A DNA stretch of 64,000 nucleotides, from contig JBLDXI010000073.1 in NCBI GenBank assembly GCA_047495785.1, positions 248,001 through 312,000 on the forward strand. The letters are read 5' to 3'. Position numbers and translations under genes: made by a program. Under the pieces are notes generated by a model. The model saw only the letters and a program-made list of their open reading frames with translations, ran no database searches and was not told the origin of the DNA. Positions 11,487 to 53,882 of the stretch are shown piece by piece. Position 1 is the first letter of the stretch, and every line of letters begins with the position of its first letter. The DNA is from Lepidodermella squamata (lineage: Eukaryota > Animalia > Gastrotricha).

Positions 11487-12251
11487 ATGAGCGTGACACA
11501 AGCCCCGAAATCTGTTCTATCTAATGGCACGAGGAAAAAGCCTGTTGGCCTTAATTTGAAGACTCAGGTTACAGCTATGCAGGCATTGAGAAGTGGGGAG
11601 AAAAACAGGATGCAGCTGGCCCACGAGCTTAACGTTGATCCCGCGACAGTTTCGCGTATGAAGGTATGATTATTTTCCAACATCGTTCTTAATTATTATA
11701 TTTTTTACTAGCGTCGAGAGCCGTTGCTCAATTTAAGTTTGAATCACCTTGGCCCACGCTTGAATGACAGTAAGCGTCTACGTAAATCGCCGTTGGAGCT
11801 AACAAATCGGGCCGTGGTTCGCCTTATAGAGCAGGCCAGGGAGCAACATATTCCTATAAGTGATCATATTGTTCAAAGCCTGGCTCTGAGAGTTCATCCT
11901 AAACTGTACCCTAACGAACAGCCGGGTGCCTTCAAGGCATCAAACGGGTGGCTAGATCGTTTGAAGCGGAATTTCGCTCTCAGATCGAAAACCATTCAAG
12001 GTGAATCTGCGGATGCGGACGTTGAAGGAGCGGCCAAGTTTCGCCTGGAGTTAAAACAACTGATCGTGGATGAGGGCTACTTAAAAAGTGAGCTCTACAA
12101 TGCCGACGAGTTGGCCATGTACTGGCGCTCCGTTCCAACACGTACGATGGTATTGCCCGAGAACGATGCCGGCTCCGGAAAGAAAATGCAAAAAAATAGG
12201 GTAACCCTATTATTTTGCACAAACTGGGACAGCATGCGAAGGAACACGTGA
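11487..12251 (+). pseudogene. Tigger/CENP-B-like transposase, truncated after the first DDE Asp (exons 11487-11663, 11712-~12230)
   Basis: psq-type HTH, CENP-B HTH (FKASNGWLDRLKR), GESADAD, YNADE, RVTLLFCTN motifs; 48-nt phase-0 intron. Confidence 0.88.
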
Positions 12252-14288: not shown

Positions 14289-16524
14289 GACTGGTTTTGT
14301 TGGAGATTGTTTTAATGAGCTGCACCGATCAACTGACGATGAATGTTGATCAGTCTGAGTCGGGAAGCCACCCACTCGCACTTTCAAGAAAAATTCTACT
14401 GAGTTCAAATAATTCTTTTAAATAAAATAAAGTATGTGTATTTCCGCATTTTTCTTTACTACAGGGCGTCCGCGAAAAAATGCGCAGCTATTTCCAGTTT
14501 TGCATGTGTTTTTTGCCGTGAGGTGAAGCTAAAATGATTATTATTTCGCGAACACACTGTAATTTAACGCCAGTCAATGCATTTATCAATGCTTACTTAT
14601 AAGCTGTAGCCCGAGAAACCACGGGGCGAGGACTCAACCTCAACGCATAAACAGATTTCAAGGCCACTTTGATTTGAGACTTTGATATAATCATTCCATT
14701 AATTGCCCGACATTCTGGGTGAGAAGAGCCGGCAATGCATCCAGGAACCCGAGCTTTTTAACGCGAGCATTTTCGATTCTATCCCTTTTAGATGATATTT
14801 GCAGAGTTGATAGGTTCTTTCGATCAGGTCGCAAGAAACTCGCGGTCGCCCCAGCAGAAATCGTAAAAAAATCATAATATTATTAAAGATGAATCATGGA
14901 TAGTAACATACATATTATTATTTTACTATTACATAACAATTCTTTTACTACTCTTCAAATTCTCATGTTATCATTATTTTTTTCTAGGATAAGTGTTCTT
15001 CAGTATTTGATGGCACGATGCGAGGCAAAAAATCCATTCAGCTTTTTACTTGTAGATAAATAGTGCTTTTTTATGTGCGCCTGTAGCCTGTTGTTGAAGG
15101 CGGAACAGCAAACTTAAACACTCGGGTAAGAATTGGACACTCCTTTCCCCGCCTGATGACAAATGAACAAGCCTAGTCGTTCCTTCTGCCGATTTGCCTA
15201 CGATATGAATTCATAATCGTCAAAAAAGGCATATGAGCCTCCATTGAGATTCTTTGAAGTTTTGTAAAAAGTGCCGCATTCAGAGGGTGTCGTAAGAGTA
15301 AAAAACGAACTTTTAGCGACTCTCGGGATCTTTGCCACCCGATCATTGAGCTTGAAAACTTGCTGAAAGCTGGATTAATCTATCTTTTGCGGCCAAGTAG
15401 GTTCGCGGAGCCAAAAACGCGCCTCTTTCACTAGCTCAGCTTCTTCTCGCTTTGATAAAGAACGTTGGCGAAGGAAAGATCAACGCAAAAAGCCTGCCAA
15501 AAAGCCATACGTTTTCAGCAGCAAACGACACGATTTGTATTCGTTCCGCACACAAATTGGGACATTTAGTCTCGAACGAGTGCCGAACGGGTCCTGGATG
15601 GGCGGGGAACAGGTGCGGGATGAGTGCGGAAGAAGTGCGGAACAGGTCCGGATTTTAGCGAGTGATCAACGCCGAATTTGGTGCAGTGGCATGATTGTCA
15701 ACTCGCTCCAACTTGATCCCAGCTCCCATCAGGTGTCTCCCTCGATAATTGCATGACCCTGAGCCCGAGCTCGAGCACTCTGTTACACTAGTCACACACT
15801 TTTTGAGCGTTATGTGTTGCTGGAGCCAATGAATCATATCTTATCTTTCAACATGTACCACATGCCCCCTTGTTCTCATGCCCAGCCCTCTTCTGCACTC
15901 ACTTTTTTCTTGTTTGCTTATCCAAATATAGGTTTACGATTACGTAATGTTGCATCAGTTTGGCTGATAGCAAGATTTCACAGCTTCTGAATCAGGAAAT
16001 TGTTATGCTGTGTGAAAATTACGATGAATATTATTGCAGGAATCGCAGCAGCGATGAATAACGCAAGACCTTCAGGTGATCCTCTCCTGACTGATCCGAG
16101 CAGCTTACTCTGGGAAACGGAGTTCTCAGAGTTCAAAATGACAATGGTTTTCGTGGGAGAATGTCATGATGGCAAGAAAAAGCCGGATCCCTGGCTGGAC
16201 AATCAGTATTCCGAATTCGATTTAGACTTCCATTTTTCCGGCATATTTCTTGTGGATAGTAAAAATGGAAAAATTAACTTCGCAGTGCCGATTCGTTGTA
16301 TCGATCGAAATAGCGATAATATTTTAGAAGCATCGCAATCAAGCGGAACAAATTCGTTTTTCACAGGAATTTACATGGCAATAATATCAGTACCAATTCT
16401 ATCAATCACAGGATGGCGTTGGTTTTCTAGCATTGCCCTTGCTCTATTGTACGGTTTAAAAATTGAATCGAATTATATCAAAGCTCGGAGCAAGCCATTT
16501 CCACTTGTTTCCTCGAAATCTACA

Positions 16525-17001
16525 ATGAACTTGGTTAAAGCTTCTTTGGCAGCACTATTTGTTGCAAGCCAAGTTCAGCTGTCAGCCGCAGCTGTTAAGC
16601 AGTGTTACCTGTGCATTCCAAGCGAGAGAATTTATTGCGGACATCCGATTAACTATGAGGTGTTTAACTGCCCTTCAAATTTCAATCATGGATGCATTTT
16701 CTTCGACAGCGAACTGTGAGCATTTGGTCATTTTATCTTGTTTTAAATTTTGAATTTCAGGGAACCCGGTATCCGTGGATGCATCGATGAGAAGGGATGC
16801 ATATCAAGTACATTTGTGCATTGCTGCACGAAAGACCTTTGCAACAACCAAACAGTTACGCCGCTTCCGACTACGAGGAAGATGGCGGCAACATTGGAAC
16901 CCAGTCTGAAAGACGCCACAACTTCTGATGCGGGGAACTCTGGTTTAGCTATCGCCGATACAATTTTGGGGGCGTTAATAGTGGCAGTGACATTGGTCTG
17001 A
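16525..17001 (+). CDS. Ly6/uPAR three-finger protein, copy 3 (exons 16525-16715, 16761-17001); stop at the end of the hydrophobic segment
   Basis: MNLVKASLAALFVASQVQLSAA signal, 10 Cys, HCCTKDLCN; ends ...NSGLAIADTILGALIVAVTLV*. Alternative in-frame ATG at 16375. Confidence 0.8.
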
Positions 17002-17695
17002 GGTGTTTTTGCATATAAGTAGATCGCGAAGGAAAAAGTAAGGAAGGAAACATCAAGCAAAATTGTTTTCGCTGGAGATTACTTCAATGACAAGAGTGAG
17101 ACTACAGATTTAACAAATCGATCAACAGACACGGAGGATAGCAAGGAGAAGGAGCGATTATTCATATCTACGCCCTTAACTAACTATTAGCTTGCAATCT
17201 AATTATTGCTTGCAATTATTTTGTTTCCATTCTGATCTTCGAGGGCGATCAGTACAGTGAAAATCAAAAGTTACGCACGGTCGAGAATTTGTTGAGTTGA
17301 AACAAAAAGTATCTCACACGCGCCTAAACTATTTTTAGCTCTATGCTTGGGTTAAACCCATATGAAAATAAAAAGTGTAAATTATTGAGCCTCACTTGTC
17401 TCAATTTTAAGCTCCTTGCAGGCCTTGTTGTAAAGAGGTAAAAACCTTGTTTTTTTAGGTCTGAATTGATGTTGTTTTTAACCGGATGTTTTCAATTTAC
17501 AATCTAGTCCAAAAATTCTACGCCGAGCACTTACCAAGTTAGTCAACGTTGTCTTTGAATATTTCGCTGTAGAAGGTATCTCATCAATATTACAGCATCA
17601 ATTTAAACATGATATACGAAAAATACACTTTGAATAAAGCTGCACGTTTACGCGCACACGAAGAAGGTTTTGTTGGTTTTTCTTAAACTTACAAA

Positions 17696-20431
17696 ATGCG
17701 CCACCCATTAGCTTCAATAATCGCCTTCCTCGGGCTGATATTCAGAGTAGTGGTTTCCCAAGACGATTTCGAATGCGGTGCTTTGAACCCTACTCCTATG
17801 CCGAAAATAAAAGGCCCAGGCAGTCAGCCAGCGGGAGCACATGAGTTTCCGTGGCTGGTTTGTTTCAATTAAACATTAATTCAATTCGAAGCGAACAGGA
17901 TGTATGCCGCAGGTCCTCCTTGAGATCGAGTTCAGCGGCGATACATTACCATCAAATTGCGGAGCGTCTCTCATCTCGAAGCAGTGGCTGATAACAGCTG
18001 CTCATTGCGTTAGGGAGCCCGGAAAGACTCTTATTTCGTTAGTCTTTTAATGAATTCTCCAGTTCGATAGTCTTCGTTCTCTTTGAACAGGATCAAAGCC
18101 AAGCTAGGTCGCCATAATTTCACAGTTCGTTCAGAGGCGGCGTCTCGCGAATCCCAAGTAGCTCTGCCTGCTTTGCTCCATCCACGCTACAACGGGAGTC
18201 AAAATTTGAACGACTTTGATTTCGCTCTCTTGCGACTAGTGAGTCCAGTTCCTGAATTCACTCCGCAGATCAAACCGATATGTCTCACCTTCGCAAACAG
18301 TATGTCTCACCGCCGCACAACCAAAAACTACGCTCTCTGAGCTAGTCAGTGAACGAAGTAATGATGTTACAGTACCTGCCCCTCTCTCACCTCGAAAGGT
18401 CCAAGCAGGAAACCCCTGAAAGCCACAAGGAACACTTTGGTCAGATGAATTCGGGGATAAAAATATTCAAACGAATTCCACCTCGCTAACAGTAAATTTT
18501 GAAGGATTTTCGCTAAAACGCGATCCCAAACCCTAAAAAATCTCTCAATATCCGCGAATTGTTAAATAACCTTTAGCTATAGCCCAAGTGCTTTCTCGTG
18601 TTTCAGCTAAACTATCTGAGATCCCGAGAAAGCTGGATCTCCAGGTACGATCGTACCGGAATTGCTCGCTTGAGTATTCCCGCAGGAGCTCGGATCCGGT
18701 CACTATCACTGACTCGAAGATGTGTTTCGCTGCCGATAAAAGCGACGTTTGCTATGGCGATTCTGGGGGCCCTCTCATGTGTATGAAATCGAGACAGACT
18801 TACCTGCTTGGCGTAATTTCTAATGGCGATGATACATGTAACGGATACTTTCCTGGCCTCTACAGCAGGGTCTGCAAGGTTCTTGATTGGATTTCGGGAA
18901 AAACAGCAGATAATCGCAGCCAGACGGGTACACCAGAGCATTCCTGTCCTGTGCTAAGCATATCGGCGGGAATTGTGACTCGTGTGGATCCGGAGGACAA
19001 TGGCGAAGTTCTAGGGCCTGGGACTGCAGTGGAAAGAGGAGCTGTTAGCGTTAAGTGCAACCCCGGTTACACCTATTCATCCTGCACATTTACGGATCCG
19101 CGGTGGTTTCCTCCGGCCACTAAAACGCCGTGAAAGGCAATTTTTCTCTAACAATTATTTGATTGCACGCTTTTGGTCAATTCAAAAATGAACGCAGGAG
19201 TCGCATTAATGATTCGAGGAAATGCTGTCATAACGTGTCAAACTAACGCTACCTGGTCCCAGCCTGGTTTTTGCGTCCCCAGGCAGCGAAGACCTGTAAG
19301 TTGACAATGAAGATCAGCAAAGTCGAATGTCATTACATTAATACTTGAGTTGAATGGTGAGCGATGCAAAAAGCCGAGTAAGCGTCGCAAATTTTGAGTA
19401 GCAAACTTTAGACTATGCTAGTATAAACCGGACATGTACAGCCCGAGTAAATTGTAGGGCCGAGTATCCGTGTCGCCGATCTATAAAAAGCTCGCATGAG
19501 TTGCATAAGTTGCATGAATCTCAACTCGCTTATGTATGCCTGTTCTGGCGTTTAGGTCCGTGAAGTGTACGAGCAGTTGTGGAATGTAACAGCCTCTACG
19601 GCCGACCTGGCGCAGGTGCGGCAACTCGTTGCGGAGATCGACGAATCCACTGGCGGCAAGTTTGACCCGAACTGGCGCCACCAAAACAAGTATGACTGCG
19701 GTGGTTGGGATGTGGTGAATGGCACCCTGCTTCACAGCGTCACGTGCAATCGGACGCAATCAGACCAACGACTGCAAATTGCTCAGCTGCTCGTAAATCG
19801 TGGAACTGACGTGAATTCCACGGAGAATAGCAATGGCTTAACGGCGTTGATGTATGCAGCTAGGAATGGGCACGTCGAGGTGGTTCGACTTTTGCTGGAT
19901 AGCAACGCTGCAATCGACGCCAAGACTACCTTTGGCAGTACAGCGTTGAATCTTGCTGCTGGGGAAGGGCACGTTGAGGTTGTTCGAGTGTTGCTAGATC
20001 ACAACGCTGCCATCGAGGCCAAGGATAACGATGGCGCAACGGCGTTAGCGAATGCGGCTTGGAGAGGGCAAGCTGACGTGGTTCGACTGTTGCTGGATCG
20101 CAACGCCGCCATCGAGTCAACAGTAAACGCTGGCTGGACGCCGGTTATGTTGGCGGCTGGATCTGGGCAACCCGACGTTGTTGAACTTTTGCTGGATCGC
20201 AAAGCTGACATCGAGGCTAAGAATGCCTACAATGGCTGGACGCCGTTAATGCACGCGGCCTCGATTGGACAGCTGGGAGTAGTTGCGCAGTTGCTGGATA
20301 GAGGGGCAAATAAAGATGCTAGAAGTTCAGACGGCAAGACAGCTCTCGATATTGCAATTTGCTGGAATAAAACCGCGGCGGCCGACTTGCTGAGGTCGCG
20401 AGGAGCAAGTAGAGCAAAGGCATCGTGTTAA
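17696..20431 (+). pseudogene. Serine protease-sushi-ankyrin gene, copy A (probably damaged)
   Basis: Exons 17696-17857, 17913-18037, 18091-18299, 18607-~19080, ~19211-19295, 19556-20431 parallel copy B. TAAHC/DFALL/GDSGG present, but a ~29-aa in-frame deletion removes the GWG region and the sushi1/sushi2 junction is replaced by unrelated sequence with a stop at 19133. The ankyrin exon is intact. Confidence 0.8.
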
Positions 20432-22032: not shown

Positions 22033-22452
22033 TATATCGTTAGCGACGTTGAATAACTCGGATTTAGGCTTGTTTACATCCGTTTAAAGGTCACGGGTGA
22101 CAAGAAAAAGCTTCATTTTTTAGCGTGAAAGAAGGGACAAAAACAAAAGACTTTTTACTTGTCACATATCACCTTAAAATGGAAGTAGATAAGCCCAAAT
22201 CCGAGTTATTGAACGTCGCCCTGATTTGCTGGGTACCGCGCCGAGCTACAATATAGCCATAGAATTTAATGCCTACTTATGTCTATGCGCTCTTTGAATA
22301 TTATGTTCTACACATAACAATATCTCATCACTATTACAAACAACACGATTTAATCATTATAAACATTTAAACATTGAATAAAGCTGCACGTTAACACACA
22401 CACACACAAAGACGGCTTTGCCTAGATTTTGTTGGCTTTTCTTGAATTGAAA

Positions 22453-25020
22453 ATGCACCACCCAATAGCTTCTATAATCGTCTTCTTTGTGCTGGTATCC
22501 GGCATAGTCGTAGGCCAAGACTATTTCGAATACGTTGCTGTAAACCCTAGAGCAATGGCGGGAATAAAAGGCCCAGGGAGCCATCCAGCAGGACCGAACG
22601 AATACCCGTGGCTGGTCAGTTTCAGTTCCATGCTAAGTTAATTTCAAAGAAAGAGGATGTTTTTCGCAGGTCCACCTTGAGATATACAGAAGCAGCGAAT
22701 CGTCAGCTTCTTATTGCGGAGCTTCCCTAATCTCGAAGCAGTGGCTGATAACAGCTGCTCATTGCGTTTGGGAAGCCGGAGATACCCCTATTTTGTACGT
22801 AAGACTGTTGATTAACCTGTTACAACAAATATTTTGCGTTTGTACAGCATCAAAGCGATGCTAGGTCGCCATAATATCAGTTTGAAGTCTGAAGCGGGCT
22901 CTTACGAATCTGTAGTGTCGCTGCCTCCTTTGGTTCATCCGCTGTACAACGGGAGTCGGAATTTCTATGACTTTGATTTCGCACTCTTGCGACTGACGAC
23001 CCCGGTTCCCAGATTCTCACAGCAGATCAAACCGATTTTTTTACCCGACGCGGTAACCATGTGCCGAGCCAACTCTATCACCGCCAATTCAATCGACGGA
23101 TGTGATTCAGCGGTGGCGGCTGGCTGGGGTCACTTTGCACACAGTATGTTTCGAAGTTTAACATCATCACGGCCTTCTACCTTCCTTATCACTTTCTTGT
23201 ATTTTAGCCAGACTATCTGAGATCCCGAGAAAGCTGGATCTTCATGTTCGATCTTACCAAAACTGCTCGCTGGAGTATTCCCGCGGCCTCTCAGATCCGA
23301 TAACTATGACAGACTCGAAGATGTGTTTAGCCGCTGATGGCAGCGACGTCTGCTTCGGTGATTCTGGCGGTCCTCTCATGTGTTTGCAATCGGGGGTGAC
23401 TTATCTTCTCGGCATAATATCCAACGGCGACGAGACATGCAATGGGTACACTCCTGGAATCTACAGCAGAGTCTGCAAAGTTCTTGATTGGATATCGGAG
23501 AACACTGGTGATGGCAGTCAAACCAGTACACCGAAGCAGTCCTGTTCTGTACCAAGCGTATCCGCAGGATTTGTGACCCGCGTGGATCCAGAAACTTCGG
23601 AAGATACCGGCGAAGTACTAAGGCCTGGAACCGCAGTGGAAAGAGGGGGAGCTGTTAGCGTTAAATGCAACCCCGGTTACTCATATTCCAACTCTGTCAA
23701 TTTTGCCACTTGCCTACCTCCATTCCGACCGGTTATTAATGGAAGGTGTACCCCAGTGGGTAGGTAAGGATAAATAATTATCTGACATTCGCGTCTGGTC
23801 ATCTGTAATACGTGTTGTTGTAGCTGCGGTCCCGTTCCTACAATTCAAAACGGCAGCATATCTTCTGGCCTTGCAAGCATCGGAGCAAACCGAAGCATAT
23901 CATGCAATCTGAATTTTGAGATTCGAGGAAATTCTGTCATTTCGTGCCAAACGAACGTAACCTGGTCACAACCTGGTTTGTGCGTTCCCAGGCGGCGAAG
24001 GACTGTAAGTTTTCCATGAAAACAAGTAAAGCCGGACCAATTTTTTGGATCCCATGTAGACATAAGGAGCTTGCATTAGTTGCGATTTGCGGTTAGCGCT
24101 AAACAGTTGGCCAAGGCACTTCTAAGAACCAAATCTCCTACACTCGACAAATCACAAACTTATGTGTTCAGACTGTTTCCCACTCCGGTTTCCTTAAATT
24201 TTATGCGATCAGTCTCTTGAGGCATTTCAAGCTTTTCTTTTTTCTATTTTAGGTCCGTGAAGTTTACGAGCAGTTGTGGAATGTAACTGCTTTTACAGCC
24301 GACTTGGGGCAGGTGCAGCAACTCGTTGCAGAGATTGACGAATCCACTGGCGGCAAGTTCGACCCGAACTGGCGCAACCCAAAGAATTATGTGTGTCGTG
24401 TCACTATTAAAAATGGCACCCTACTGCACAGCGTTGCGTGCAATCAGATGCAATCAGACCAGCGACTGCAAATAACCCAGCTGTTCGTCGAGCGTGGAGC
24501 TGATGTTAATTCAAAGGAGGATTACTATGACAGGACAGCGTTGATGCATGCGGCTGGGGATGGGCGCGTCGAAGTAGTCCGACTGTTGCTGGATCGCAAC
24601 GCTGACATTGAGGCGAAGGATAAAATTGGCTGGAGTGCGTTGATGCTTGCAGCTTATAATGGGCGAGCCGAAGTAGTCCCAGTGTTGCTGGATCGCAACG
24701 CTGACATTGAGGCCAAGAGTAGCTATGGCTGGACGGCGTTGATGCTTGCGGCCGAGTCAGGGCAAGTCGAAGTAGTTCGACTGCTGCTGGATCGCAACGC
24801 TGACATCGAGGCCAGGGATGACCGTGCCCGGACGGCGCTGATGCATGCGGCAATGACAGGGCATGTCGAAGCAGTTCGACTGTTGCTGGATAGAGGTGCA
24901 AATAAGAATGCTAGAGATTCATTAGGAAAAACAGCTCTCGATATCGCAATTTGCGATACTACAATTGTTGCTGATTTGCTGAAGACGCGAGGAGCAAGTG
25001 GATCAAAGTCATCCTGCTGA
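22453..25020 (+). CDS. Secreted trypsin-like serine protease - 2x sushi/CCP - RRRR - ankyrin-repeat protein, 695 aa (exons 22453-22614, 22670-22794, 22848-23143, 23208-23763, 23824-24004, 24253-25020)
   Basis: Five GT-AG introns (phases 0,2,1,2,0) give one open 2088-nt frame: signal peptide, TAAHC, DFDFALL, GWG, DVCFGDSGGP, a divergent sushi, canonical sushi CGPVPTIQNG...C...C...WSQPGLC, PRRRRT, then ~6 ankyrin repeats (TALMxAA...G...VVRLLLDRNADIEAKD). Confidence 0.88.
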
Positions 25021-34016: not shown

Positions 34017-35763
34017 CACCTTTTTTCAATTGCAATTGCGGAAAATTCAAAACAGTTTGCAGGCACGTGGTTTATGTGTGACGGTTGTTTATCTGAAAAT
34101 TTAAATTTAAATCACGTGCTCACGCCACCATTTCGTGTCATGTTTTGAGGCCAGAGACAACTCTTTCATGAACTTTCGAGAAAAGAAGAACGAAAAATGC
34201 TCTCAATATTCATCTTCATTCAATCATTCATGAAAAAAATTTATTTCCGAAATTTCTACAAAATTTTTGTTCAAAAAAATTATTCTCAAATTAATGCCTT
34301 ACAACAGAACATCAAACGTAGATCGGTTAAGGTTGATACGGGCTTTCAATGACGGTACTGATTACGTTAATTTCGGTAGGATGCTCGGCATCAAAGAGCG
34401 AACGATTTATAACATCATAAGTACTTATAGAGAAGAAAATCGCTCGGAAAGTTTGCATCGAGGGGGGCGACCAAAGGCTTGGCGGGAGGATTTTACCCAT
34501 TTCGTTATTGAGAGGCTTGAGGACAATAGCCAGCTTACCCTGGAACAAATTCAGACAATGCTGCTTGTCGAGTTCGGCGCTGGCCTCTCCATTTCCACTA
34601 TCCATCGTCACCTTGAGTATATCGGCTTTACTGTTAAGAAGGTCTACGCTTGTCCAGCGGATAGAAATCGACCTGATGTCATAGCCCTAAGAATTGTTTA
34701 CGCGAATTGGTTCAACGGGTTTCGTCTGCATAACAGGTATTACTATCAGGACGAGTTCGGGGTCTGCCTTTGGACTCGTCGATCTTGTGGCCGAGCTCGT
34801 CGTGGTCAGCGGGCTGTTGTGCAAAATCCGATGTCCCATGGTGGCAAAAATGTGTCTGTTTCGGTCGTCGTTTCGAGGCATGAGGGGTTGGTCTATTATC
34901 GATTGTACGATGAAGGTATGAAAAACAACATGTTTCGTGAGTTTATGCTCCAGGTATGAGCGGAAAAATTCATCAAATTGACGATTTTTCTGAAAAATTT
35001 GATTTATAGGCGTCAGCAGTGGTTGGCGTTAATAACCCGGCGACTTTCATCATCGACAATTGCCGCTCTCACAATGGCGCCGTCGGTGAACTGCCGCAAG
35101 GCCATACCATACACTTTTTACCGCCGTACTCACCATTTCTAAACCCAATAGAAAATGTTTTCTCTGCTGTCAAGTCTGGCATCAAAAGAGAAATTGCGGC
35201 GAGACGTGTCGAGCTGTTTGAGCTTCTAGCCGCTGCCCGAGAACTTGGTCAACCGATGACGCCAATTTGTCGAAACTTTCTGCACGAAATTGTCGAGCGT
35301 AATCTTCGATCGATCGTTACTCCGGCATTGGTGCGAGCCTGTGACGATCATGTACTGAATTATCTTCCAGCTTGTGCTGCTGGGCAACCGATTATTTATT
35401 AAGAAATTTTTGCAGGAAAAATTGAAGAACCGAAAAAAGATGAATGAAATAAAAGAAACGTTTAATCGCGTGCTTCGCTTTATTGCTCGGTGGTTCCGAG
35501 ACCGAGGCTGATCTTTCTAAAGTGGCCCCACGCTTTCGGCCACTACGATTTCGATTCGGCGACGGATCGGTTGAACTTGACATTTTTATTTGCTTTTCTC
35601 ACGAAGAATTTGAAGAAACTGAAGGGCTGGACAGACATTTAAACTAGTGCAATGCTATTAATAAATGAGTTCAATCCTAGCCAAGATGATACAAGCAAAT
35701 AAACAAAAAGCACGCGATTGCAATTAGTTTTGAATTTTCTGCAATTGCAAATGAAAAAATGTG
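34017..35763 (+). mobile_element. Tc1/IS630-superfamily DNA transposon, apparently full length
   Basis: 37-bp TIRs CACCTTTTTTCAATTGCAATTGCGGAAAATTCAAAAC (3 mismatches) with TA flanks. Confidence 0.92.
34294..35402 (+). CDS. Tc1/IS630-type DDE transposase, 350 aa (exons 34294-34953, 35010-35402)
   Basis: HTH with GGRPK, YQDEFG, IIDNCRSH, LPPYSPFLNPIENVF; a 56-nt phase-0 GT-AG intron joins the two ORFs with no stop. Confidence 0.88.
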
Positions 35764-39721: not shown

Positions 39722-42700
39722 AAATCGAAGGAGTCCACTTCTTTCTGCTCATCATTCCTGTTCGTGCTCTTTTTCTTTTCTTCTGTGATTTAAGTTACTC
39801 TCTGTCATGTTATGGAAAGAACCCGAATGGAAATACGCTGCCGTGACCGGTCATGAAAGCCGGCAAGCCTCTTGGAGATTTCCCGTCCCAGCGGCCGGTT
39901 CCGCTGCTCATCTAACACCACCATGCAGCATCTGTCCAGCACTGATTCAGATGATTTTACGTGAAAAATAGGCGATGCGGCATCTTCAATGTTTCCAGCA
40001 GCCACTGCACAACTACGCCACGCTCGCCGCTAAATGTGAGCTTCCGAAAATGCGTAAATAATGCGTATATTCAAAACGCGAAGAAAAAGCACAAGGCGGT
40101 ACCAACCCCGCCTTCCACGAGGCTGCCGAAGAAGCTCAATGTGAACGGCCTTTCAGCCGATGCGATCGCCGAAGTGCAGGCGCTGATCTCGCAGCACCGC
40201 AGCACGAACGCGTCACCCTCCTCCTCCCACGACAAGATGGATGCCACGGCGGACTTCCCGGCCCTACCTGTGTCGTCTACCGTTTCGCCGGTTCATGCAA
40301 CGTCGCCGCCCGCCCCACGCCCGGCCTCGGCCACGGCTAACCCCGTCAGTAAGCGTGTCGTTATTATCGATAACATCACCAACATGCGTCGATGCGAGCT
40401 TGAGCCCGAGCTTGTGCGAGTGGCACCCTGGCTCGAATATCACTCTGCCGTCGACATGCGGAGCGGCGGCCTCCGGATCATCTGCTCTACGCCTGCTGGC
40501 GCGGATCGATTGCTGAAGAAGGAACTCCCTTCTGGCGCCTTCAAGGGCAGCGCCTATCGGGTTCACCGTCCTAGTGAACCGGATCCTAGTCGCCCGCTCC
40601 CTCCTGCGGTTGACAAGGACAATCGCAGCGTTTTGACATCTCGGCTCTTAAGAAATACCTTAATTTTCTTCAAACGTCTGGAGAAAATAGTTAGCACAGC
40701 CATTCAAACTACTGTCTGAGGATTGGCAAATTACCTTTGACAATAGGGCTTTCCTCTGCCCAATGATCTAATTTGCTTTCTAGGGAACCTGAGGTTCCCT
40801 AGTTATGAGGGCAGGCAGGGACATCTCGGCTCTCGGGTTGCTATTCGGCTGCCGATATCCGTGCCTATCTGCCCCTTGATTATATGGAGGAGGTTCGCGA
40901 CCTGCCGGCGAAGGACCCCCACCGCCCACCCACTCGCGTCATCGTATTCAAGACGAAGGAGGCGTATGAAGATGCCCGCCTCCATGGGATGCAGTGGCTG
41001 AACCGGCGCGTAAAGGTACGCCCCATGCGGCCACCCGTGCCGCCCGCTAAGTGTCGCAAATGTAGTCGTTATGGCCACGTCGCTATCGACTGCCCCCTGC
41101 CTTCTCCGTCACGTGTGGCCGCTGCGGCAAAGCGCACCTCACAGAGGGCTGCGGCGCTACCCGCGAACAAGCGTTTTGTTGCAACTGCCCTGAAGGCGGC
41201 TCCCCGAGACATTTCAGTACCTGGCGCGGCTGCCCTGCTTTCAAAGCTGCGCAGTCGGCCGAAGTCGCGTCCCGACACGCCCGTGCTGCTGCCAAGAGTG
41301 AGAAGATCGCCGCGGCAGCCAGTGTTCACCACGGCCGAGGCCCGCCGTCTCCTGTGACGCCCGGGCGCAGCTATGCTCGCACTGCTGCACCGACGCCGCC
41401 GCCAGCCGCCACCGCCGCCTGCTCACCCATCGGCGCCTGTCTCCGGGCAGCACTCGGCTGCTCAGCTCAGTGTGGCCGTTGCCGGCATATCGTCTCTTCT
41501 CCAAAAAATCCAGCAGCTCCATCACCTCTCTGACGCAGTGGCGGCCGATCGCGCCAAACAGGATGGATGGCGTGAGAAATTCGAGTTGTCTATGGCAGAT
41601 CTGGCGGATGAAGTCTACGACCTGCGCTCTAGCGGCAACAACCAGTCAATGAGTGTCGACCGTGACCGCTATCGCTACGACGACGACAACTGATCTCGTG
41701 GTAATGATGCAGTGGAATCCCCAAGGTGCTAACGGAAAGCCTGTTGAAGTTAGTTACTTGGCTGAAAATGTTGATGCGCTATTTGTTTTTCTCTCAGAGA
41801 CTTATTTCTTCCCCCTCTCCTCTGTCTTTTTCCATCGCTATGCCGTGTTTAGATGTGACAGGGAGCAAGCCCCGGACGATCTGTTGTACCGTGGCTCCTG
41901 TGGCGGCTCTGCTTTCTTAGTCCGTGAAGGCGTCACTGTCGTTCGTGAACGTAAGATGCCGCTGTCTGGCAGGAAGCGCAGTGAGTGGCTGCGCATTGAT
42001 GTCATCCCCGACCCTCGTTCTGCTGTGATTCGATTGGTCACCGGATATTGCCCGCCGTCCTCTGACTTGGATTTGCGGTTTCTTGAGCAGGAGTTTGAAG
42101 AGACAAACACGTCCCGCACGCCCTGTGTTTTCGGCGGCGATTTGAACGCCAAGTCTCCTCTGTGGAGTGAAGCTGACCATTGGAATCCGCATGGCTATCA
42201 CCTACATCACATGGTGGCCCGGCTCGGTCTCACCGTCTTAAAGTCCGCCCCGACTCATATCGATCTCCGCACTGGCTCTCTCTCTCGACCCTGGATGTTT
42301 GGGTGGTCAATGACGCCGCTATGCAATTTCTCAGCGGGGGAGTTACCGTGGGTGACCGCCTCAGTAGCGACCACTTCAGCACCTCGCTCTGCCTCGAAAT
42401 ACCTGTGATCGGAGCTCGTCGCTTGCTGCCTCCTCCTGACCCCGCCCCGCGGTTTGATCTCTCTCGAGCCGATCGTAGAGGCTTTCAACGGACGCTGTGG
42501 GACCTCCTGCCTGCTATTCCTCTTCCGCAGGTTGGCGACCCTCTGGACCGGCTGCTTGCGTACCGCCGTGCCATCAATGCCGCTATCGTCGAGGCGCGTC
42601 GCCTTCATGTACCCCTATGTGACCGCAGTGAACTAAAGAAGATTTCCATGTCTGCCGATATGCGCTTGATCCTGAAGCAGAAGCGTGTTCTAGAGCGCGC

Positions 42701-43635
42701 GATTGGCCCTCATTGTGATCCCCAGTTGGCAGTAGAGATCAAGCGACTGGACGGCGAGTTTCGAGAAGCTAAGCAACAGCACGAGTTCCGCCGCGACGTT
42801 GCGAATCTGCGTATGGTTGAGGCTCTTTCAGGACAACTTCGGTATCGCGAGGCGTGGGTCCGGCTCCGGCGGCTCGACCGTCATCAGCCGCGGCGCCCCA
42901 GTGGGCACATGAAACTGGACGATGGAACTGTTCTGGCACCGTCCGCTTCGCTTGCTGACGAGTTACTTACCCACTTCACTTCGCCGATGACGCCCTACTG
43001 CGACCCGGCCGCCGACGACGCCCTGCGCAAGCGTTGGCTCCAGCTTGAGACCCTGATGGCCACCGATCCTGACCTTCAAAGCAAGGCTACGATTCATCTG
43101 CCAGGCCCTGACGACTTCAACGTAAGCCAACGCATGCTTGCTCAAGAGATCGACCGTCTGCAACCGTTCAAGGCTCCAGGGATCGACGGCGTCGGTAATG
43201 TCTATTACAAGTGGGGCGGCGTTCCGTTGCAAGCTCACCTTCGGCGCCTCTATAATATGTGTCTCGGTAGCCAATTCCCCTGCCCGATTGGAAGGAGGCG
43301 GTTGTTGTCGCTGTTCCCAAGCCGGGTAAGCCGTCTGACGCCGTTAGCTCTCAACGCCCGATTTCGCTATTACCTTCTGATGGTAAGATATTGGAGGCGA
43401 TCGTTGCGCGCTGGATGAGTCGTTTCTTGGAGGATAGACACCTCCTGCCTGACAATCAGTATGGGTTCCGCGAGCACCACTCCGCTGTCGACATTCCCGT
43501 CCAAATCGCTCATCGGGCGTACCAGTGCCGTGCTGACAAGCTCAAGTTGGTCGTTGTGGGTCTTGATGTGAAGGCGGCTTACGACTCCGTATGGCACGCC
43601 GGCCTCGTCCACCGCCTCTGCGGACTTCCTATATA
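39722..43635 (+). mobile_element. Non-LTR retrotransposon (APE-type LINE): ORF1 with CCHC knuckles, ORF2 endonuclease + RT N-half; degenerate and 3'-truncated
   Basis: CRKCSRYGHVAIDC knuckle; MQWN, LSET, GDLNAKS, SDH endonuclease motifs; KAPGIDG, PKPGK, RPISLL, QYGFR, LDVKAAYDSVWH RT motifs; frameshifts; cut by a MITE fragment at ~43635. Confidence 0.9.
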
Positions 43636-49967: not shown

Positions 49968-52900
49968 AAATCGAAGGAGTCCACTTCTTTCTGCTCATCA
50001 TTCCTGTTCGTGCTCTTTTTCTTTTCTTCTGTGATTTAAGTTACTCTCTGTCATGTTATGGAAAGAACCCGAATGGAAATACGCTGCCGTGACCGGTCAT
50101 GAAAGCCGGCAAGCCTCTTGGAGATTTCCCGTCCCAGCGGCCGGTTCCGCTGCTCATCTAACACCACCATGCAGCATCTGTCCAGCACTGATTCAGATGA
50201 TTTTACGTGAAAAATAGGCGATGCGGCATCTTCAATGTTTCCAGCAGCCACTGCACAACTACGCCACGCTCGCCGCTAAATGTGAGCTTCCGAAAATGCG
50301 TAAATAATGCGTATATTCAAAACGCGAAGAAAAAGCACAAGGCGGTACCAACCCCGCCTTCCACGAGGCTGCCGAAGAAGCTCAATGTGAACGGCCTTTC
50401 AGCCGATGCGATCGCCGAAGTGCAGGCGCTGATCTCGCAGCACCGCAGCACGAACGCGTCACCCTCCTCCTCCCACGACAAGATGGATGCCACGGCGGAC
50501 TTCCCGGCCCTACCTGTGTCGTCTACCGTTTCGCCGGTTCATGCAACGTCGCCGCCCGCCCCACGCCCGGCCTCGGCCACGGCTAACCCCGTCAGTAAGC
50601 GTGTCGTTATTATCGATAACATCACCAACATGCGTCGATGCGAGCTTGAGCCCGAGCTTGTGCGAGTGGCACCCTGGCTCGAATATCACTCTGCCGTCGA
50701 CATGCGGAGCGGCGGCCTCCGGATCATCTGCTCTACGCCTGCTGGCGCGGATCGATTGCTGAAGAAGGAACTCCCTTCTGGCGCCTTCAAGGGCAGCGCC
50801 TATCGGGTTCACCGTCCTAGTGAACCGGATCCTAGTCGCCCGCTCCCTCCTGCGGTTGACAAGGACAATCGCAGCGTTTTGACATCTCGGCTCTTAAGAA
50901 ATACCTTAATTTTCTTCAAACGTCTGGAGAAAATAGTTAGCACAGCCATTCAAACTACTGTCTGAGGATTGGCAAATTACCTTTGACAATAGGGCTTTCC
51001 TCTGCCCAATGATCTAATTTGCTTTCTAGGGAACCTGAGGTTCCCTAGTTATGAGGGCAGGCAGGGACATCTCGGCTCTCGGGTTGCTATTCGGCTGCCG
51101 ATATCCGTGCCTATCTGCCCCTTGATTATATGGAGGAGGTTCGCGACCTGCCGGCGAAGGACCCCCACCGCCCACCCACTCGCGTCATCGTATTCAAGAC
51201 GAAGGAGGCGTATGAAGATGCCCGCCTCCATGGGATGCAGTGGCTGAACCGGCGCGTAAAGGTACGCCCCATGCGGCCACCCGTGCCGCCCGCTAAGTGT
51301 CGCAAATGTAGTCGTTATGGCCACGTCGCTATCGACTGCCCCCTGCCTTCTCCGTCACGTGTGGCCGCTGCGGCAAAGCGCACCTCACAGAGGGCTGCGG
51401 CGCTACCCGCGAACAAGCGTTTTGTTGCAACTGCCCTGAAGGCGGCTCCCCGAGACATTTCAGTACCTGGCGCGGCTGCCCTGCTTTCAAAGCTGCGCAG
51501 TCGGCCGAAGTCGCGTCCCGACACGCCCGTGCTGCTGCCAAGAGTGAGAAGATCGCCGCGGCAGCCAGTGTTCACCACGGCCGAGGCCCGCCGTCTCCTG
51601 TGACGCCCGGGCGCAGCTATGCTCGCACTGCTGCACCGACGCCGCCGCCAGCCGCCACCGCCGCCTGCTCACCCATCGGCGCCTGTCTCCGGGCAGCACT
51701 CGGCTGCTCAGCTCAGTGTGGCCGTTGCCGGCATATCGTCTCTTCTCCAAAAAATCCAGCAGCTCCATCACCTCTCTGACGCAGTGGCGGCCGATCGCGC
51801 CAAACAGGATGGATGGCGTGAGAAATTCGAGTTGTCTATGGCAGATCTGGCGGATGAAGTCTACGACCTGCGCTCTAGCGGCAACAACCAGTCAATGAGT
51901 GTCGACCGTGACCGCTATCGCTACGACGACGACAACTGATCTCGTGGTAATGATGCAGTGGAATCCCCAAGGTGCTAACGGAAAGCCTGTTGAAGTTAGT
52001 TACTTGGCTGAAAATGTTGATGCGCTATTTGTTTTTCTCTCAGAGACTTATTTCTTCCCCCTCTCCTCTGTCTTTTTCCATCGCTATGCCGTGTTTAGAT
52101 GTGACAGGGAGCAAGCCCCGGACGATCTGTTGTACCGTGGCTCCTGTGGCGGCTCTGCTTTCTTAGTCCGTGAAGGCGTCACTGTCGTTCGTGAACGTAA
52201 GATGCCGCTGTCTGGCAGGAAGCGCAGTGAGTGGCTGCGCATTGATGTCATCCCCGACCCTCGTTCTGCTGTGATTCGATTGGTCACCGGATATTGCCCG
52301 CCGTCCTCTGACTTGGATTTGCGGTTTCTTGAGCAGGAGTTTGAAGAGACAAACACGTCCCGCACGCCCTGTGTTTTCGGCGGCGATTTGAACGCCAAGT
52401 CTCCTCTGTGGAGTGAAGCTGACCATTGGAATCCGCATGGCTATCACCTACATCACATGGTGGCCCGGCTCGGTCTCACCGTCTTAAAGTCCGCCCCGAC
52501 TCATATCGATCTCCGCACTGGCTCTCTCTCTCGACCCTGGATGTTTGGGTGGTCAATGACGCCGCTATGCAATTTCTCAGCGGGGGAGTTACCGTGGGTG
52601 ACCGCCTCAGTAGCGACCACTTCAGCACCTCGCTCTGCCTCGAAATACCTGTGATCGGAGCTCGTCGCTTGCTGCCTCCTCCTGACCCCGCCCCGCGGTT
52701 TGATCTCTCTCGAGCCGATCGTAGAGGCTTTCAACGGACGCTGTGGGACCTCCTGCCTGCTATTCCTCTTCCGCAGGTTGGCGACCCTCTGGACCGGCTG
52801 CTTGCGTACCGCCGTGCCATCAATGCCGCTATCGTCGAGGCGCGTCGCCTTCATGTACCCCTATGTGACCGCAGTGAACTAAAGAAGATTTCCATGTCTG

Positions 52901-53882
52901 CCGATATGCGCTTGATCCTGAAGCAGAAGCGTGTTCTAGAGCGCGCGATTGGCCCTCATTGTGATCCCCAGTTGGCAGTAGAGATCAAGCGACTGGACGG
53001 CGAGTTTCGAGAAGCTAAGCAACAGCACGAGTTCCGCCGCGACGTTGCGAATCTGCGTATGGTTGAGGCTCTTTCAGGACAACTTCGGTATCGCGAGGCG
53101 TGGGTCCGGCTCCGGCGGCTCGACCGTCATCAGCCGCGGCGCCCCAGTGGGCACATGAAACTGGACGATGGAACTGTTCTGGCACCGTCCGCTTCGCTTG
53201 CTGACGAGTTACTTACCCACTTCACTTCGCCGATGACGCCCTACTGCGACCCGGCCGCCGACGACGCCCTGCGCAAGCGTTGGCTCCAGCTTGAGACCCT
53301 GATGGCCACCGATCCTGACCTTCAAAGCAAGGCTACGATTCATCTGCCAGGCCCTGACGACTTCAACGTAAGCCAACGCATGCTTGCTCAAGAGATCGAC
53401 CGTCTGCAACCGTTCAAGGCTCCAGGGATCGACGGCGTCGGTAATGTCTATTACAAGTGGGGCGGCGTTCCGTTGCAAGCTCACCTTCGGCGCCTCTATA
53501 ATATGTGTCTCGGTAGCCAATTCGCCCTGCCCGATTGGAAGGAGGCGGTTGTTGTCGCTGTTCCCAAGCCGGGTAAGCCGTCTGACGCCGTTAGCTCTCA
53601 ACGCCCGATTTCGCTATTACCTTCTGATGGTAAGATATTGGAGGCGATCGTTGCGCGCTGGATGAGTCGTTTCTTGGAGGATAGACACCTCCTGCCTGAC
53701 AATCAGTATGGGTTCCGCGAGCACCACTCCGCTGTCGACATTCCCGTCCAAATCGCTCATCGGGCGTACCAGTGCCGTGCTGACAAGCTCAAGTTGGTCG
53801 TTGTGGGTCTTGATGTGAAGGCGGCTTACGACTCCGTATGGCACGCCGGCCTCGTCCACCGCCTCTGCGGACTTCCTATATA
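49968..53882 (+). mobile_element. Duplicate of the degenerate LINE (RT frame open 52426-53886)
   Basis: Same as 39722-43635, with an extra G near 53524 that removes one frameshift. Confidence 0.9.

What the first reader, a model, noticed from the sequence alone, without database searches (positions are those of the whole stretch)
22453..25020. Secreted protease-sushi-sushi-RxRR-ankyrin fusion: candidate undescribed cleavable effector/recognition protein
Seen: the separate protease and ankyrin ORFs are one gene. A sushi exon missing from the ORF track (23824-24004) and a phase-0 intron (24005-24252) link them into a 695-aa frame with a signal peptide and no TM. The same donor/acceptor (…RR(T/P)|gtaag…ag|VREVYEQLWN) is conserved in paralog A. 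Established: in complement-type proteases (C1r/s, MASP, factor B) CCP modules lie N-terminal to the protease, and ankyrin repeats are mostly intracellular (latrotoxins being a secreted exception). Inference: this reversed order with a secreted ankyrin module may be an undescribed targeted protease or pro-toxin architecture.
Basis: partly seen in the sequence, partly recalled or inferred. Interest (0 to 1): 0.92.

Follow-up and report, generated by a model that had tools for sequence, protein, structure and literature searches.

The report
Secreted protease fused to ankyrin repeats
An unidentified small animal genome carries an apparently intact gene, one of at least 46 related copies, that joins an export signal, a trypsin-type protease and two complement-type (sushi) modules to ankyrin repeats, a binding module that normally works inside cells but here looks built to work outside them.

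Summary
Six GT-AG exons (22453-25020, +) splice into a 695-aa open frame. It reads: signal peptide, S1A protease (His/Asp/Ser triad, Asp189), a divergent CCP, a clear sushi, an RRRR linker, and a 7-repeat ankyrin domain. There is no membrane span.

No RNA data were available, so the sushi-to-ankyrin join rests on comparison:
- At least 46 copies of the protease/sushi exon exist in this 121-Mb genome, and 38 have the family's ankyrin N-cap within 6 kb downstream on the same strand.
- The phase-0 donor and acceptor are conserved in more than 20 copies.
- One copy has only a 57-bp intron there.
- The ankyrin exon never begins with ATG, is under purifying selection, and folds from its second residue.

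The ankyrin arrays (about 3 to 25 repeats) carry two cysteines in each cap, conserved glycosylation sequons and almost no internal cysteines. They vary at the canonical binding positions.

The polybasic "cleavage site" is not conserved across the family, and Pro usually follows it. Gene B also lacks the family's activation-site lysine and propeptide cysteine.

I found no relative with this architecture in two large protein collections, and no paper among three full-text searches. Other readers of this scan noted the same family on other contigs of this genome. Function is inferred: a protease with a built-in variable binding module.

The parts
22376..22392 (+). Conserved upstream motif (core AAAGCTGCACGTT), about 60 bp before the start codon; candidate promoter or 5'-UTR element of the family
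   Evidence: Found 47-90 bp upstream of the protease start codon in gene B, paralog A and at least 10 other copies. It never lies directly upstream of an ankyrin exon.
22453..22614 (+). Exon 1: start codon, signal peptide (residues 1-21, predicted cut after VVG), propeptide and the start of the protease
   Evidence: The family consensus has Cys in the propeptide and Lys before (I/S)(K/R)GPGS. Gene B has Tyr and Gly at these two places.
22670..22794 (+). Exon 2: protease, catalytic His (residue 85, 22760-22762) in the motif TAAHC
   Evidence: Pfam Trypsin E 1.8e-7; model. The donor is GTACGT, phase 2.
22848..23143 (+). Exon 3: protease, catalytic Asp (residue 139, 22975-22977) and the GWG strand
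   Evidence: Pfam Trypsin. The motif is conserved in paralogs.
23208..23542 (+). Exon 4, first part: protease C-terminal half. S1-pocket Asp189 equivalent (residue 241, 23345-23347); catalytic Ser (residue 247, 23363-23365) in GDSGGP
   Evidence: Pfam Trypsin E 2.2e-16. SDVC-x-GDSGGP is conserved in nearly all copies.
23543..23749 (+). Exon 4, second part (the exon ends at 23763): divergent 69-aa four-cysteine CCP-like module ('sushi 1')
   Evidence: Alignment A1 has 17 invariant columns including 4 Cys. A profile search of PDB puts complement factor H CCPs first, E 2.3e-4. The AlphaFold model is all-beta, pLDDT 70. Foldseek hits are mostly CCP modules, TM 0.45-0.58, none significant. No Pfam hit.
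23824..23989 (+). Exon 5: canonical sushi/CCP module ('sushi 2')
   Evidence: Pfam Sushi E 3.6e-10. Alignment A2 has 4 Cys and the Trp invariant.
23990..24004 (+). Linker RRRR-T at the end of exon 5 (residues 436-440), followed by a phase-0 GTAAG donor
   Evidence: It is the only run of 3 or more basic residues in the protein and matches R-x-[KR]-R. It is variable in paralogs. The genome encodes about 8-10 proprotein-convertase P domains.
24005..24252 (+). Intron 5 (248 bp, phase 0), GTAAG...TTTTAG
   Evidence: It contains no hydrophobic ORF or AATAAA (read). The equivalent intron is 57 bp in L035.
24253..25020 (+). Exon 6: ankyrin domain, 255 aa, 7 helix-pair repeats, stop codon at 25018-25020. 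Cys 488/503 lie in the N-cap, Cys 674/695 in the C-cap. Sequons at N450 and N494
   Evidence: Pfam Ank E 1.6e-42. AlphaFold pLDDT 92.7, pTM 0.89, helix from residue 2. Foldseek hits to consensus ankyrins, DARPins and ankyrin-1, TM about 0.8. The 4 Cys are conserved. dN/dS is 0.33-0.63.
17696..20431 (+). Paralog A: tandem copy with the same exon order and the same sushi-ankyrin junction. It has lost about 28 codons of protease exon 3 (including the GWG strand). The sushi1/sushi2 boundary is replaced by about 130 bp holding a TGA
   Evidence: Only a weak GTTACA donor would restore a single chimeric sushi.

Best explanation
Gene B (22453-25020, +) is a single six-exon gene. It belongs to a large lineage-specific family of secreted modular serine proteases.

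Shown or directly readable:
- an N-terminal signal peptide;
- an S1A protease with an intact His/Asp/Ser triad and Asp at the S1 position, which predicts cleavage after Arg/Lys;
- one divergent and one canonical CCP module;
- a 7-residue basic linker;
- a 7-repeat ankyrin solenoid that begins at the first residue of the last exon;
- no membrane span.

Inferred:
- The whole chain enters the secretory pathway, so the ankyrin domain works outside the cell. There its N- and C-caps are each pinned by a disulfide and its N-cap is glycosylated.
- The ankyrin array is the binding module. Its framework is near-invariant while the canonical binding-groove positions and the repeat number vary between copies.
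- The array brings, or restricts, the covalently attached protease to a target. That would make it a one-chain recognition-plus-protease molecule, used in defence or in attack on prey or microbes.
- In gene B the RRRR-T linker could also be cut by a furin-type convertase, or by the protease itself, separating the two halves.
- Gene B may be a poorly activatable member, because it lacks the family's Lys at the activation site.

The confidence given is for the whole statement. The single-gene, secreted architecture alone I put near 0.9, and the targeting function near 0.45.
For: Gene model and domains.

Join of sushi to ankyrin:
- 38 of 46 genomic copies of exon 4 have the family's ankyrin N-cap within 6 kb downstream on the same strand, 33 of them within 3 kb. 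Chance expectation is 0.0017 per copy.
- The last sushi exon ends in a phase-0 GT[AG]AG donor in nearly all of the 40 fetched loci. The ankyrin exon follows a pyrimidine tract plus AG (mostly TTTAG) and starts (V/I)REVYEQLWNVT in about 20.
- The intron is only 57 bp in L035, which leaves no room for another exon.
- The first in-frame Met of the ankyrin exon lies 43-101 codons in for most copies.
- N-cap dN/dS is 0.14-0.49.
- The model is confident from residue 2.
- The shared upstream motif occurs only before exon 1.

Extracellular adaptation:
- Two Cys lie in each cap: the N-cap pair and the terminal Cys in all 17 aligned copies, the C-cap AIC Cys in about 90%.
- Both C-cap Cys are lost together in L033 and L039.
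- Cys frequency in the internal repeats is 0.19%.
- Sequon density is 3.3 per 100 aa in the N-cap.

Binding-module reading:
- Entropy is 3.3 bits at the DARPin-randomised positions 2, 3, 5, 13, 14, 33 against 1.25 elsewhere.
- dN is 4-fold higher there, and pooled dN/dS is 0.78 against 0.32.
- Repeat number ranges from about 3 to 25.

Protease competence: the triad and Asp189 are conserved family-wide.

Convertases are present in the genome.
Against: - No transcript, peptide or secretion evidence. The only run is genomic DNA.
- The signal peptide was judged by hydropathy and the -3/-1 rule only.
- Disulfides and glycosylation are inferred from conservation.
- Gene B lacks the activation-site Lys and the propeptide Cys that most copies keep, so its protease may not be activated.
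- dN/dS at the variable positions is below 1 when pooled. It exceeds 1 only in three small pairs, so diversifying selection is not shown.
- No target is known.
- The polybasic site is not conserved.
Confidence: 0.55

Rival explanations
1. Cleavable two-part protein. The RRRR site is cut in the secretory pathway or by the protease itself. The ankyrin half is then released as a separate effector or toxin-like cargo, or it acts as a removable inhibitory pro-domain.
For: Gene B has R-R-R-R followed by Thr in a 7-residue linker between two folded domains. The protease should cut after Arg/Lys (Asp189). About 8-10 convertase P domains are in the genome. About a third of the copies have R-x-R-R.
Against: The motif is absent from many copies (TRLP, AKQRP, KRT, IETPS). 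In most copies that have it, Pro follows, and neither furin-type nor trypsin-type enzymes cut readily before Pro (established enzymology). Cleavage therefore cannot be the family's general mechanism.
Confidence: 0.2
2. Gene B is a protease-disabled or decaying member. It would act only through binding, or not at all, because its zymogen cannot be activated.
For: Gly replaces the Lys that precedes the (I/S)(K/R)GPGS N-terminus in most copies. Tyr replaces the propeptide Cys. The neighbour, paralog A, is clearly damaged. Other readers reported dead-protease relatives elsewhere in the genome (unchecked).
Against: All six exons are open with canonical splice sites, and the triad and Asp189 are intact. 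The ankyrin exon is under purifying selection against all 16 compared copies. The family's activation motif is itself non-canonical, so the rules may differ.
Confidence: 0.2
3. Two separate genes: a protease-sushi gene ending by read-through just after RRRRT, and an independently transcribed ankyrin gene.
For: No RNA evidence for the join. Read-through of the donor gives a stop after 4 codons. ORF tracks show them as separate ORFs.
Against: The ankyrin exon has no start codon for 65 codons in gene B (43-101 in most copies), yet that stretch is conserved, constrained and folded. Donor, acceptor and phase are conserved. The intron is 57 bp in L035. The two parts are linked in 38 of 46 copies. 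No promoter-like shared motif lies before the ankyrin exon.
Confidence: 0.07
4. A hidden transmembrane exon lies between sushi 2 and the ankyrin exon. The protease would then be extracellular and the ankyrin repeats cytoplasmic, as in ordinary receptors.
For: Ankyrin repeats are cytoplasmic in nearly all known animal proteins (established knowledge). A basic run often follows a membrane span.
Against: No hydrophobic ORF lies in the 248-bp intron. The intron is 57-194 bp in several copies and its sequence is not conserved. The basic run lies before the intron, not after it. Paired cap cysteines, sequons and depletion of internal Cys argue for an oxidising compartment.
Confidence: 0.03

Closest known systems
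Complement-type modular serine proteases (C1r, C1s, MASP-1/2/3; also factor B/C2)
   Same: Secreted S1A protease with Arg/Lys specificity. Two CCP modules lie next to the catalytic domain. Presumed role in extracellular recognition-triggered proteolysis.
   Different: In those proteins the CCPs lie N-terminal to the protease, preceded by CUB-EGF-CUB (or followed by vWA in factor B/C2). Recognition is done by separate proteins (C1q, MBL, ficolins). Here the CCPs are C-terminal, there is no CUB/EGF/vWA, and an ankyrin array is fused in cis. The nearest database proteases are only 35-40% identical and carry no Sushi or Ank.
Limulus factor C and insect modular serine protease (ModSP)
   Same: One chain that combines binding modules (including sushi) with a trypsin-type protease at the head of a defence cascade (from established knowledge).
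   Different: Their binding modules are N-terminal (Cys-rich/EGF/sushi/LCCL/lectin, or LDLa/sushi). None has ankyrin repeats. No sequence relation beyond the protease fold was found.
Designed and consensus ankyrin repeat proteins (DARPins)
   Same: Best structural matches to the ankyrin exon (TM 0.77-0.88). The framework is near-invariant and variability is concentrated at the positions randomised in DARPin libraries. There are special capping repeats.
   Different: DARPins are synthetic and Cys-free. Here the caps carry conserved cysteine pairs and sequons, and the array is part of a natural secreted protease.
Latrotoxins (spider venom)
   Same: A long ankyrin array that acts outside the producing cell. 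Maturation is by furin-type cleavage at basic sites (from memory, not tested here).
   Different: No protease or CCP domains. The N-terminal domains are different. There are no cysteine-capped repeats. No sequence relation was tested or claimed.
Extracellular leucine-rich-repeat proteins with cysteine caps (LRRNT/LRRCT; lamprey VLRs, Toll-like receptors)
   Same: By analogy only: a solenoid repeat array of variable length. Its extracellular versions are flanked by disulfide-bonded capping modules, and its concave face varies for recognition.
   Different: The repeat fold is different and there is no homology. VLRs diversify somatically, whereas here the diversity is in germ-line gene copies.

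Membership tests
S1A (chymotrypsin/trypsin) serine proteases, Pfam PF00089 | Sequence match to the family profile above the curated cut-off | tested here: met
   The three exon pieces score 31.6, 23.4 and 60.8 bits against a 20.6 cut-off.
S1A (chymotrypsin/trypsin) serine proteases, Pfam PF00089 | Catalytic triad His57/Asp102/Ser195 in the motifs AAHC, D-x-A-L-L, GDSGGP | tested here: met
   His85, Asp139 and Ser247 of the 695-aa model. They are conserved in most paralogs.
S1A (chymotrypsin/trypsin) serine proteases, Pfam PF00089 | Zymogen activation by cleavage after Arg/Lys, exposing an Ile/Val-x-Gly-Gly N-terminus | tested here: not met
   Gene B reads ...AMAG-IKGPGS. Gly replaces the Lys found in most copies, and the family motif (K-SRGPGS or K-IKGPGS) is itself non-canonical. 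Divergent relatives L047, L048 and L051 keep K-IMGG.
S1A (chymotrypsin/trypsin) serine proteases, Pfam PF00089 | Proteolytic activity | not testable with these tools
   Needs recombinant protein and a substrate assay.
Sushi / CCP / SCR module, Pfam PF00084 | About 60 residues with four spaced Cys and a conserved Trp, matching the profile (module 2, 23825-23983) | tested here: met
   Pfam E 3.6e-10, 40.5 bits against a 20.7 cut-off. The 4 Cys and the Trp are invariant in 21 copies.
Sushi / CCP / SCR module, Pfam PF00084 | The same for module 1 (23543-23749) | tested here: inconclusive
   Four invariant Cys in 69 aa, but Phe in place of Trp and no Pfam hit. A profile search of PDB puts factor H CCPs on top at E 2.3e-4. 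The fold model's best matches are mostly CCPs, but none below E 0.1. Profile-profile comparison with module 2 gives probability 4.7%.
Ankyrin repeat, Pfam PF00023 / PF12796 | Tandem 33-residue helix-turn-helix repeats matching the profile and folding as a solenoid | tested here: met
   Pfam E 1.6e-42. The AlphaFold model has 7 helix pairs, pLDDT 92.7. Foldseek E 6e-15 to ankyrin repeat proteins.
Complement C1r/C1s/MASP family | Domain order CUB-EGF-CUB-CCP-CCP-protease | tested here: not met
   No CUB or EGF hit. The CCPs follow the protease.
Furin/proprotein-convertase substrate | R-x-[K/R]-R motif in an exposed linker, with a residue other than Pro after it | tested here: met
   RRRR-T at residues 436-440, between the last sushi Cys (433) and the first ankyrin helix (442). 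This holds for gene B only. Most paralogs have Pro after the motif, or no motif.
Furin/proprotein-convertase substrate | Actual cleavage at the site | not testable with these tools
   Needs expression and N-terminal sequencing or a blot.
Classical secreted protein | Cleavable N-terminal signal peptide and no membrane span or GPI tail | tested here: met
   By hydropathy and the -3/-1 rule only. Residues 3-21 score 2.26, the maximum elsewhere is 1.18, and the C-terminus ...GSKSSC is hydrophilic. No dedicated predictor was available.

The most novel reading that the evidence does not exclude
The family is a germ-line-encoded extracellular recognition repertoire built on ankyrin repeats, the counterpart of cysteine-capped LRR receptors. 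Each variable binder is fused in one chain to its own trypsin-type effector protease. Target binding would then directly place or trigger proteolysis. That would be a one-molecule version of the lectin-pathway logic and the first animal system using ankyrin arrays for extracellular recognition.
Probability: 0.25. Interest if true: 0.9.

Novelty: new variant of a known kind. Interest (0 to 1): 0.72.

Why it matters
Ankyrin repeats are among the commonest binding scaffolds in biology, but in animals they are taken to be cytoplasmic. The engineered DARPins show how well they could work outside cells.

This family would show that nature made the same move, if the join and secretion are confirmed. 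The evidence is a large family of secreted proteins in which ankyrin arrays have disulfide-pinned caps, glycosylation sites, cysteine-free interiors and variable binding faces.

Fusion to an apparently active Arg/Lys-specific protease suggests a new way of aiming extracellular proteolysis. The roughly 3-to-25-repeat diversity across dozens of clustered genes has the look of a defence or attack repertoire.

It also gives ready-made natural designs for oxidation-stable ankyrin binders. The claim is directly testable by cDNA sequencing and by expressing one gene.

Tried and rejected
1. RNA evidence. The look-up of sequencing runs returned a single run holding 97% of the sampled words, introns included. 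Laying it showed genomic contigs at about 66x over exons and introns alike. The only 'joint' near an intron (19302 to 19559) does not coincide with the splice sites and has a 24-letter side, so it is cross-mapping from a paralog and not splicing.

2. Orthologues:
- The ankyrin exon against 5.8 billion clusters gave only generic ankyrin proteins at 33-55% identity.
- Exon 4 against 1.84 billion representatives gave only generic or multi-trypsin proteins at 28-46% identity. Ten of them carried no Sushi or Ank.
- The family-specific N-cap, searched within a 785-aa paralog frame, gave two irrelevant weak hits.
- Caveat: the lineage is poorly sampled. An ordinary ENPP-type gene of this genome also finds nothing above 36% identity, so absence of orthologues is weak evidence of restriction.

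3. Identifying the organism. No COX1 is in the assembly. HSP90 and enolase exons were too short for the length window of the protein search. The ENPP search gave unnamed hits. The organism stays unidentified. Other readers guessed rotifer or nematode (unchecked).

4. I suspected intron-less paralogs when tblastn gave single alignments spanning sushi and ankyrin (L013, L017, L024, L035). They were gapped alignments across short introns, not continuous ORFs.

5. Full-length structure prediction and complex prediction were not attempted. The spliced protein has no reference and may not be typed in, and I make no binding claim that a complex job would test.

7. Literature. Three full-text searches found nothing on trypsin-sushi-ankyrin or secreted/extracellular ankyrin architectures in animals.
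Full report
**What is there**

The window is eukaryotic DNA with short GT-AG introns. On the + strand between 22453 and 25020, six exons join into a 2,088-nt frame of 695 codons with no internal stop. The exons are 22453-22614, 22670-22794, 22848-23143, 23208-23763, 23824-24004 and 24253-25020.

Pfam places Trypsin on exons 2-4, Sushi on exon 5 (E 3.6e-10) and ankyrin repeats on exon 6 (E 1.6e-42).

Hydropathy shows one hydrophobic stretch, residues 3-21, followed by VVG|QD. Nothing above 1.18 on a 19-residue Kyte-Doolittle window lies elsewhere, and the C-terminus is hydrophilic. That reads as a signal peptide, no membrane span and no GPI tail.

The protease has His85, Asp139 and Ser247 in the usual motifs. 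Asp occupies the S1-pocket position six residues before the serine, so it should cut after Arg/Lys.

The protein has 22 cysteines: 10 in the protease, 4 in each sushi and 4 in the ankyrin exon.

**The first 'sushi'**

Residues 307-375 (23543-23749) get no Pfam hit.
- Across 21 copies it is a highly conserved 69-aa module with four invariant cysteines and Phe where CCPs have Trp.
- A profile of it finds complement factor H, DAF, CD46 and C4BP CCP modules first in the PDB, but weakly (best E 2.3e-4).
- Its AlphaFold model is an all-beta module (pLDDT 70). Its Foldseek neighbours are mostly CCPs at TM 0.45-0.58, none significant.

I call it a divergent CCP-like module, not proven.

**Is the ankyrin exon part of the same gene?**

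No RNA could be brought to bear. The only public run that holds this DNA covers introns and exons evenly and is the genomic source. The case is therefore comparative, and it is strong.

1. The genome (121 Mb, 151 contigs) holds at least 46 copies of exon 4 at 57-86% identity. They cluster on contigs C4, C64, C42, C36, C73 and C81.
2. It holds at least 117 matches to the family-specific ankyrin N-cap.
3. Of the 46 exon-4 copies, 33 have an N-cap within 3 kb downstream on the same strand and 38 within 6 kb. About 0.002 per copy is expected by chance.
4. In 40 fetched loci the exon boundaries fall at the same residues as in gene B.
5. The last sushi exon ends a few residues after its fourth Cys in a phase-0 GTAAG/GTGAG donor in nearly all loci.
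6. The ankyrin exon begins directly after a pyrimidine tract and an AG acceptor (mostly TTTAG) with (V/I)REVYEQLWNVT, also phase 0, in about 20.
7. The intron between them varies from about 1.9 kb down to 57 bp (L035). At 57 bp there is no room for a hidden exon, start codon or membrane span.
8. The first in-frame Met of the ankyrin exon lies 65 codons in for gene B and 43-101 codons in for most copies. Yet that stretch is the best conserved part of the exon.
9. The same stretch evolves at dN/dS 0.14-0.49. In the AlphaFold model it is helical from residue 2 (pLDDT 92.7, pTM 0.89, seven helix pairs).
10. A shared motif, AAAGCTGCACGTT, sits 47-90 bp upstream of the protease start codon in a dozen copies and never before an ankyrin exon.

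I put the single-gene reading at about 0.9.

**Signs that the ankyrin domain is built for the outside**

- The exon carries four cysteines in fixed places: two in the N-cap (48 and 63-68 of the exon), one in the last repeat (A-I-C) and the very last residue. The N-cap pair and the terminal Cys are invariant in 17 aligned copies; the A-I-C Cys is present in about 90%.
- In L033 and L039 both C-cap cysteines are missing together. In L027 the A-I-C cysteine is replaced by one a few residues earlier. That is the pattern expected of a disulfide pair.
- The internal repeats hold 13 Cys in 6,876 residues, or 0.19%.
- Sequons (WNVT, NGT, CNxT) are conserved in the N-cap, at 3.3 per 100 residues against about 1 elsewhere.

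None of this was measured on a protein. I could not read Cys-Cys distances from the model.

**Signs of a variable binding module**

- From 155 distinct internal repeats the framework is nearly fixed (for example L23 100%, LLLDR-NA-IEA). The most variable positions are 13, 5, 14, 10, 3 and 2.
- Mean entropy at the six positions randomised in DARPin libraries is 3.3 bits, against 1.25 for the rest.
- Over 11 paralog pairs, dN at the variable positions is four times that of the framework (0.43 against 0.10). Pooled dN/dS is 0.78 against 0.32. Three small pairs exceed 1. This is suggestive, not proof of positive selection; gene conversion and repeat mis-registration were not excluded.
- Repeat number runs from about 3 to about 25 (ankyrin ORFs of 200 to 952 aa). 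Sushi number is two or three.
- The model's best structural matches are consensus ankyrins, DARPins and ankyrin-1/B/G at TM about 0.8.

**The 'RxRR cleavage site'**

Gene B has RRRR-T in a 7-residue linker between the last sushi Cys and the first ankyrin helix. It is the only basic run in the protein. The genome encodes about 8-10 proprotein-convertase P domains. Cleavage of gene B there, by a convertase or by a trypsin-like family member, is therefore plausible.

But the motif is not a family constant. The linkers read RQRRP (commonest), SQRRP, KHRRP, RLRRP, AKRRP, AKQRP, TRLP, ARLP, KRT, RQQAP, IETPS, IESAS and KESPS. Where a dibasic pair exists it is usually followed by Pro, a poor site for both enzyme classes (established enzymology).

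**Peculiarities of gene B and its neighbour**

Most copies read ...E-C...NPTAMA-K|(S/I)(R/K)GPGS. This aligns with the K|IMGG activation site kept by the divergent relatives L047, L048 and L051. Gene B has Tyr for the propeptide Cys and Gly for the Lys. Its zymogen may not be activated in the family's usual way, although the rest of the gene is intact and constrained.

Paralog A (17696-20431) keeps the signal peptide, triad motifs, junction and an open 291-aa ankyrin exon, but it is damaged in two places:
- It lacks about 28 codons of exon 3, including the GWG strand and two cysteines.
- About 130 bp with a TGA replaces the sushi1/sushi2 boundary. Only a weak GTTACA donor would rescue a single chimeric sushi.

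Its protease is probably defective.

**Comparison with what is known**

The nearest database proteases are 35-40% identical, and ten of the best lacked Sushi and Ank. Neither the ankyrin exon nor its N-cap finds a relative with a protease. Three full-text literature searches found no such architecture.

The lineage is thinly sampled, however. An ordinary ENPP-type gene of this genome also finds nothing above 36% identity. 'Lineage-specific' is therefore provisional. The organism could not be identified.

Functionally the closest analogues are complement-type and horseshoe-crab/insect modular proteases, which have the reverse domain order and other binding modules. Extracellular LRR receptors with cysteine caps share the solenoid logic but have a different fold. 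By fold, the ankyrin part is closest to DARPins.

**Relation to earlier notes of this scan**

Other readers and follow-up agents reported the same family on other contigs of this genome (s1-430912, s1-395073, s1-422674, s1-373998). They reached the same architecture and also lacked RNA. Their notes are AI notes; the tests above are my own.

Their note of a 'conserved polybasic cleavage site' (s1-387835) is not borne out family-wide.

**Verdict**

The single-gene, secreted protease-CCP-CCP-ankyrin architecture is very likely real and undescribed. It belongs to a large diversified family.

The function, a protease aimed or governed by a fused variable extracellular ankyrin binder, is inferred at about even odds. 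The cleavable-effector reading is a minority possibility for this copy. Transcript and secretion evidence are the missing steps.

Noticed in passing
window 39961-43418 and 50207-53886 (+): Two copies of a GC-rich (about 58%) non-LTR retrotransposon, 10,246 bp apart, with identical ORFs (gag-like, endonuclease, reverse transcriptase). The RT ORF of the first copy is shorter (412 against 486 aa). This looks like a recent tandem or segmental duplication.
   Followed up: partly
window 57756-58358 (+) and 16000-16719 (+): Two ORFs share a cysteine motif (VKQCY-x-C-x-PSE...YCGHP...F-x-CP). The first has a signal peptide and a C-terminal membrane span. Neither has a Pfam match. Possibly a small Ly6-like surface-protein family flanking the protease genes.
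   Followed up: no
window 11724-12251 (+) and 34267-34959 (+): DNA-transposon remnants: a Tc5/pogo-type DNA-binding domain, and an HTH plus DDE_3 (Tc1/mariner-like) transposase fragment.
   Followed up: partly
G000 genome-wide, e.g. C10:362767-369667, C64:609410-640727, C4:1761235-1790230: The ankyrin N-cap has at least 117 matches, well over twice the number of strong exon-4 copies. Further subfamilies with other N-terminal parts or very long arrays (ORFs up to 835 aa or more) probably exist.
   Followed up: no
L047, L048, L051 (G000 C78:43943-49988, C36:210323-216368, C36:198679-204709): Divergent relatives keep the classical K|IMGG activation site. A second trypsin-like gene lies just downstream of the sushi exons where other copies have an ankyrin N-cap. 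They may represent the ancestral, ankyrin-less state of the family.
   Followed up: no
L032/L039, L015/L016, L022/L023, L047/L048, L043/L045, L033/L038: Several copies on different contigs, or close by on one contig, are near-identical pairs (for example L032 against L039, dS about 0.06). They could be recent duplicates or uncollapsed haplotypes, so the count of 46 may include allelic pairs.
   Followed up: partly
window 22376-22392 and 17632-17648: The 17-nt motif GAATAAAGCTGCACGTT is identical upstream of gene B and paralog A, and its core is shared by a dozen family members. It is a candidate family-specific promoter element.
   Followed up: partly
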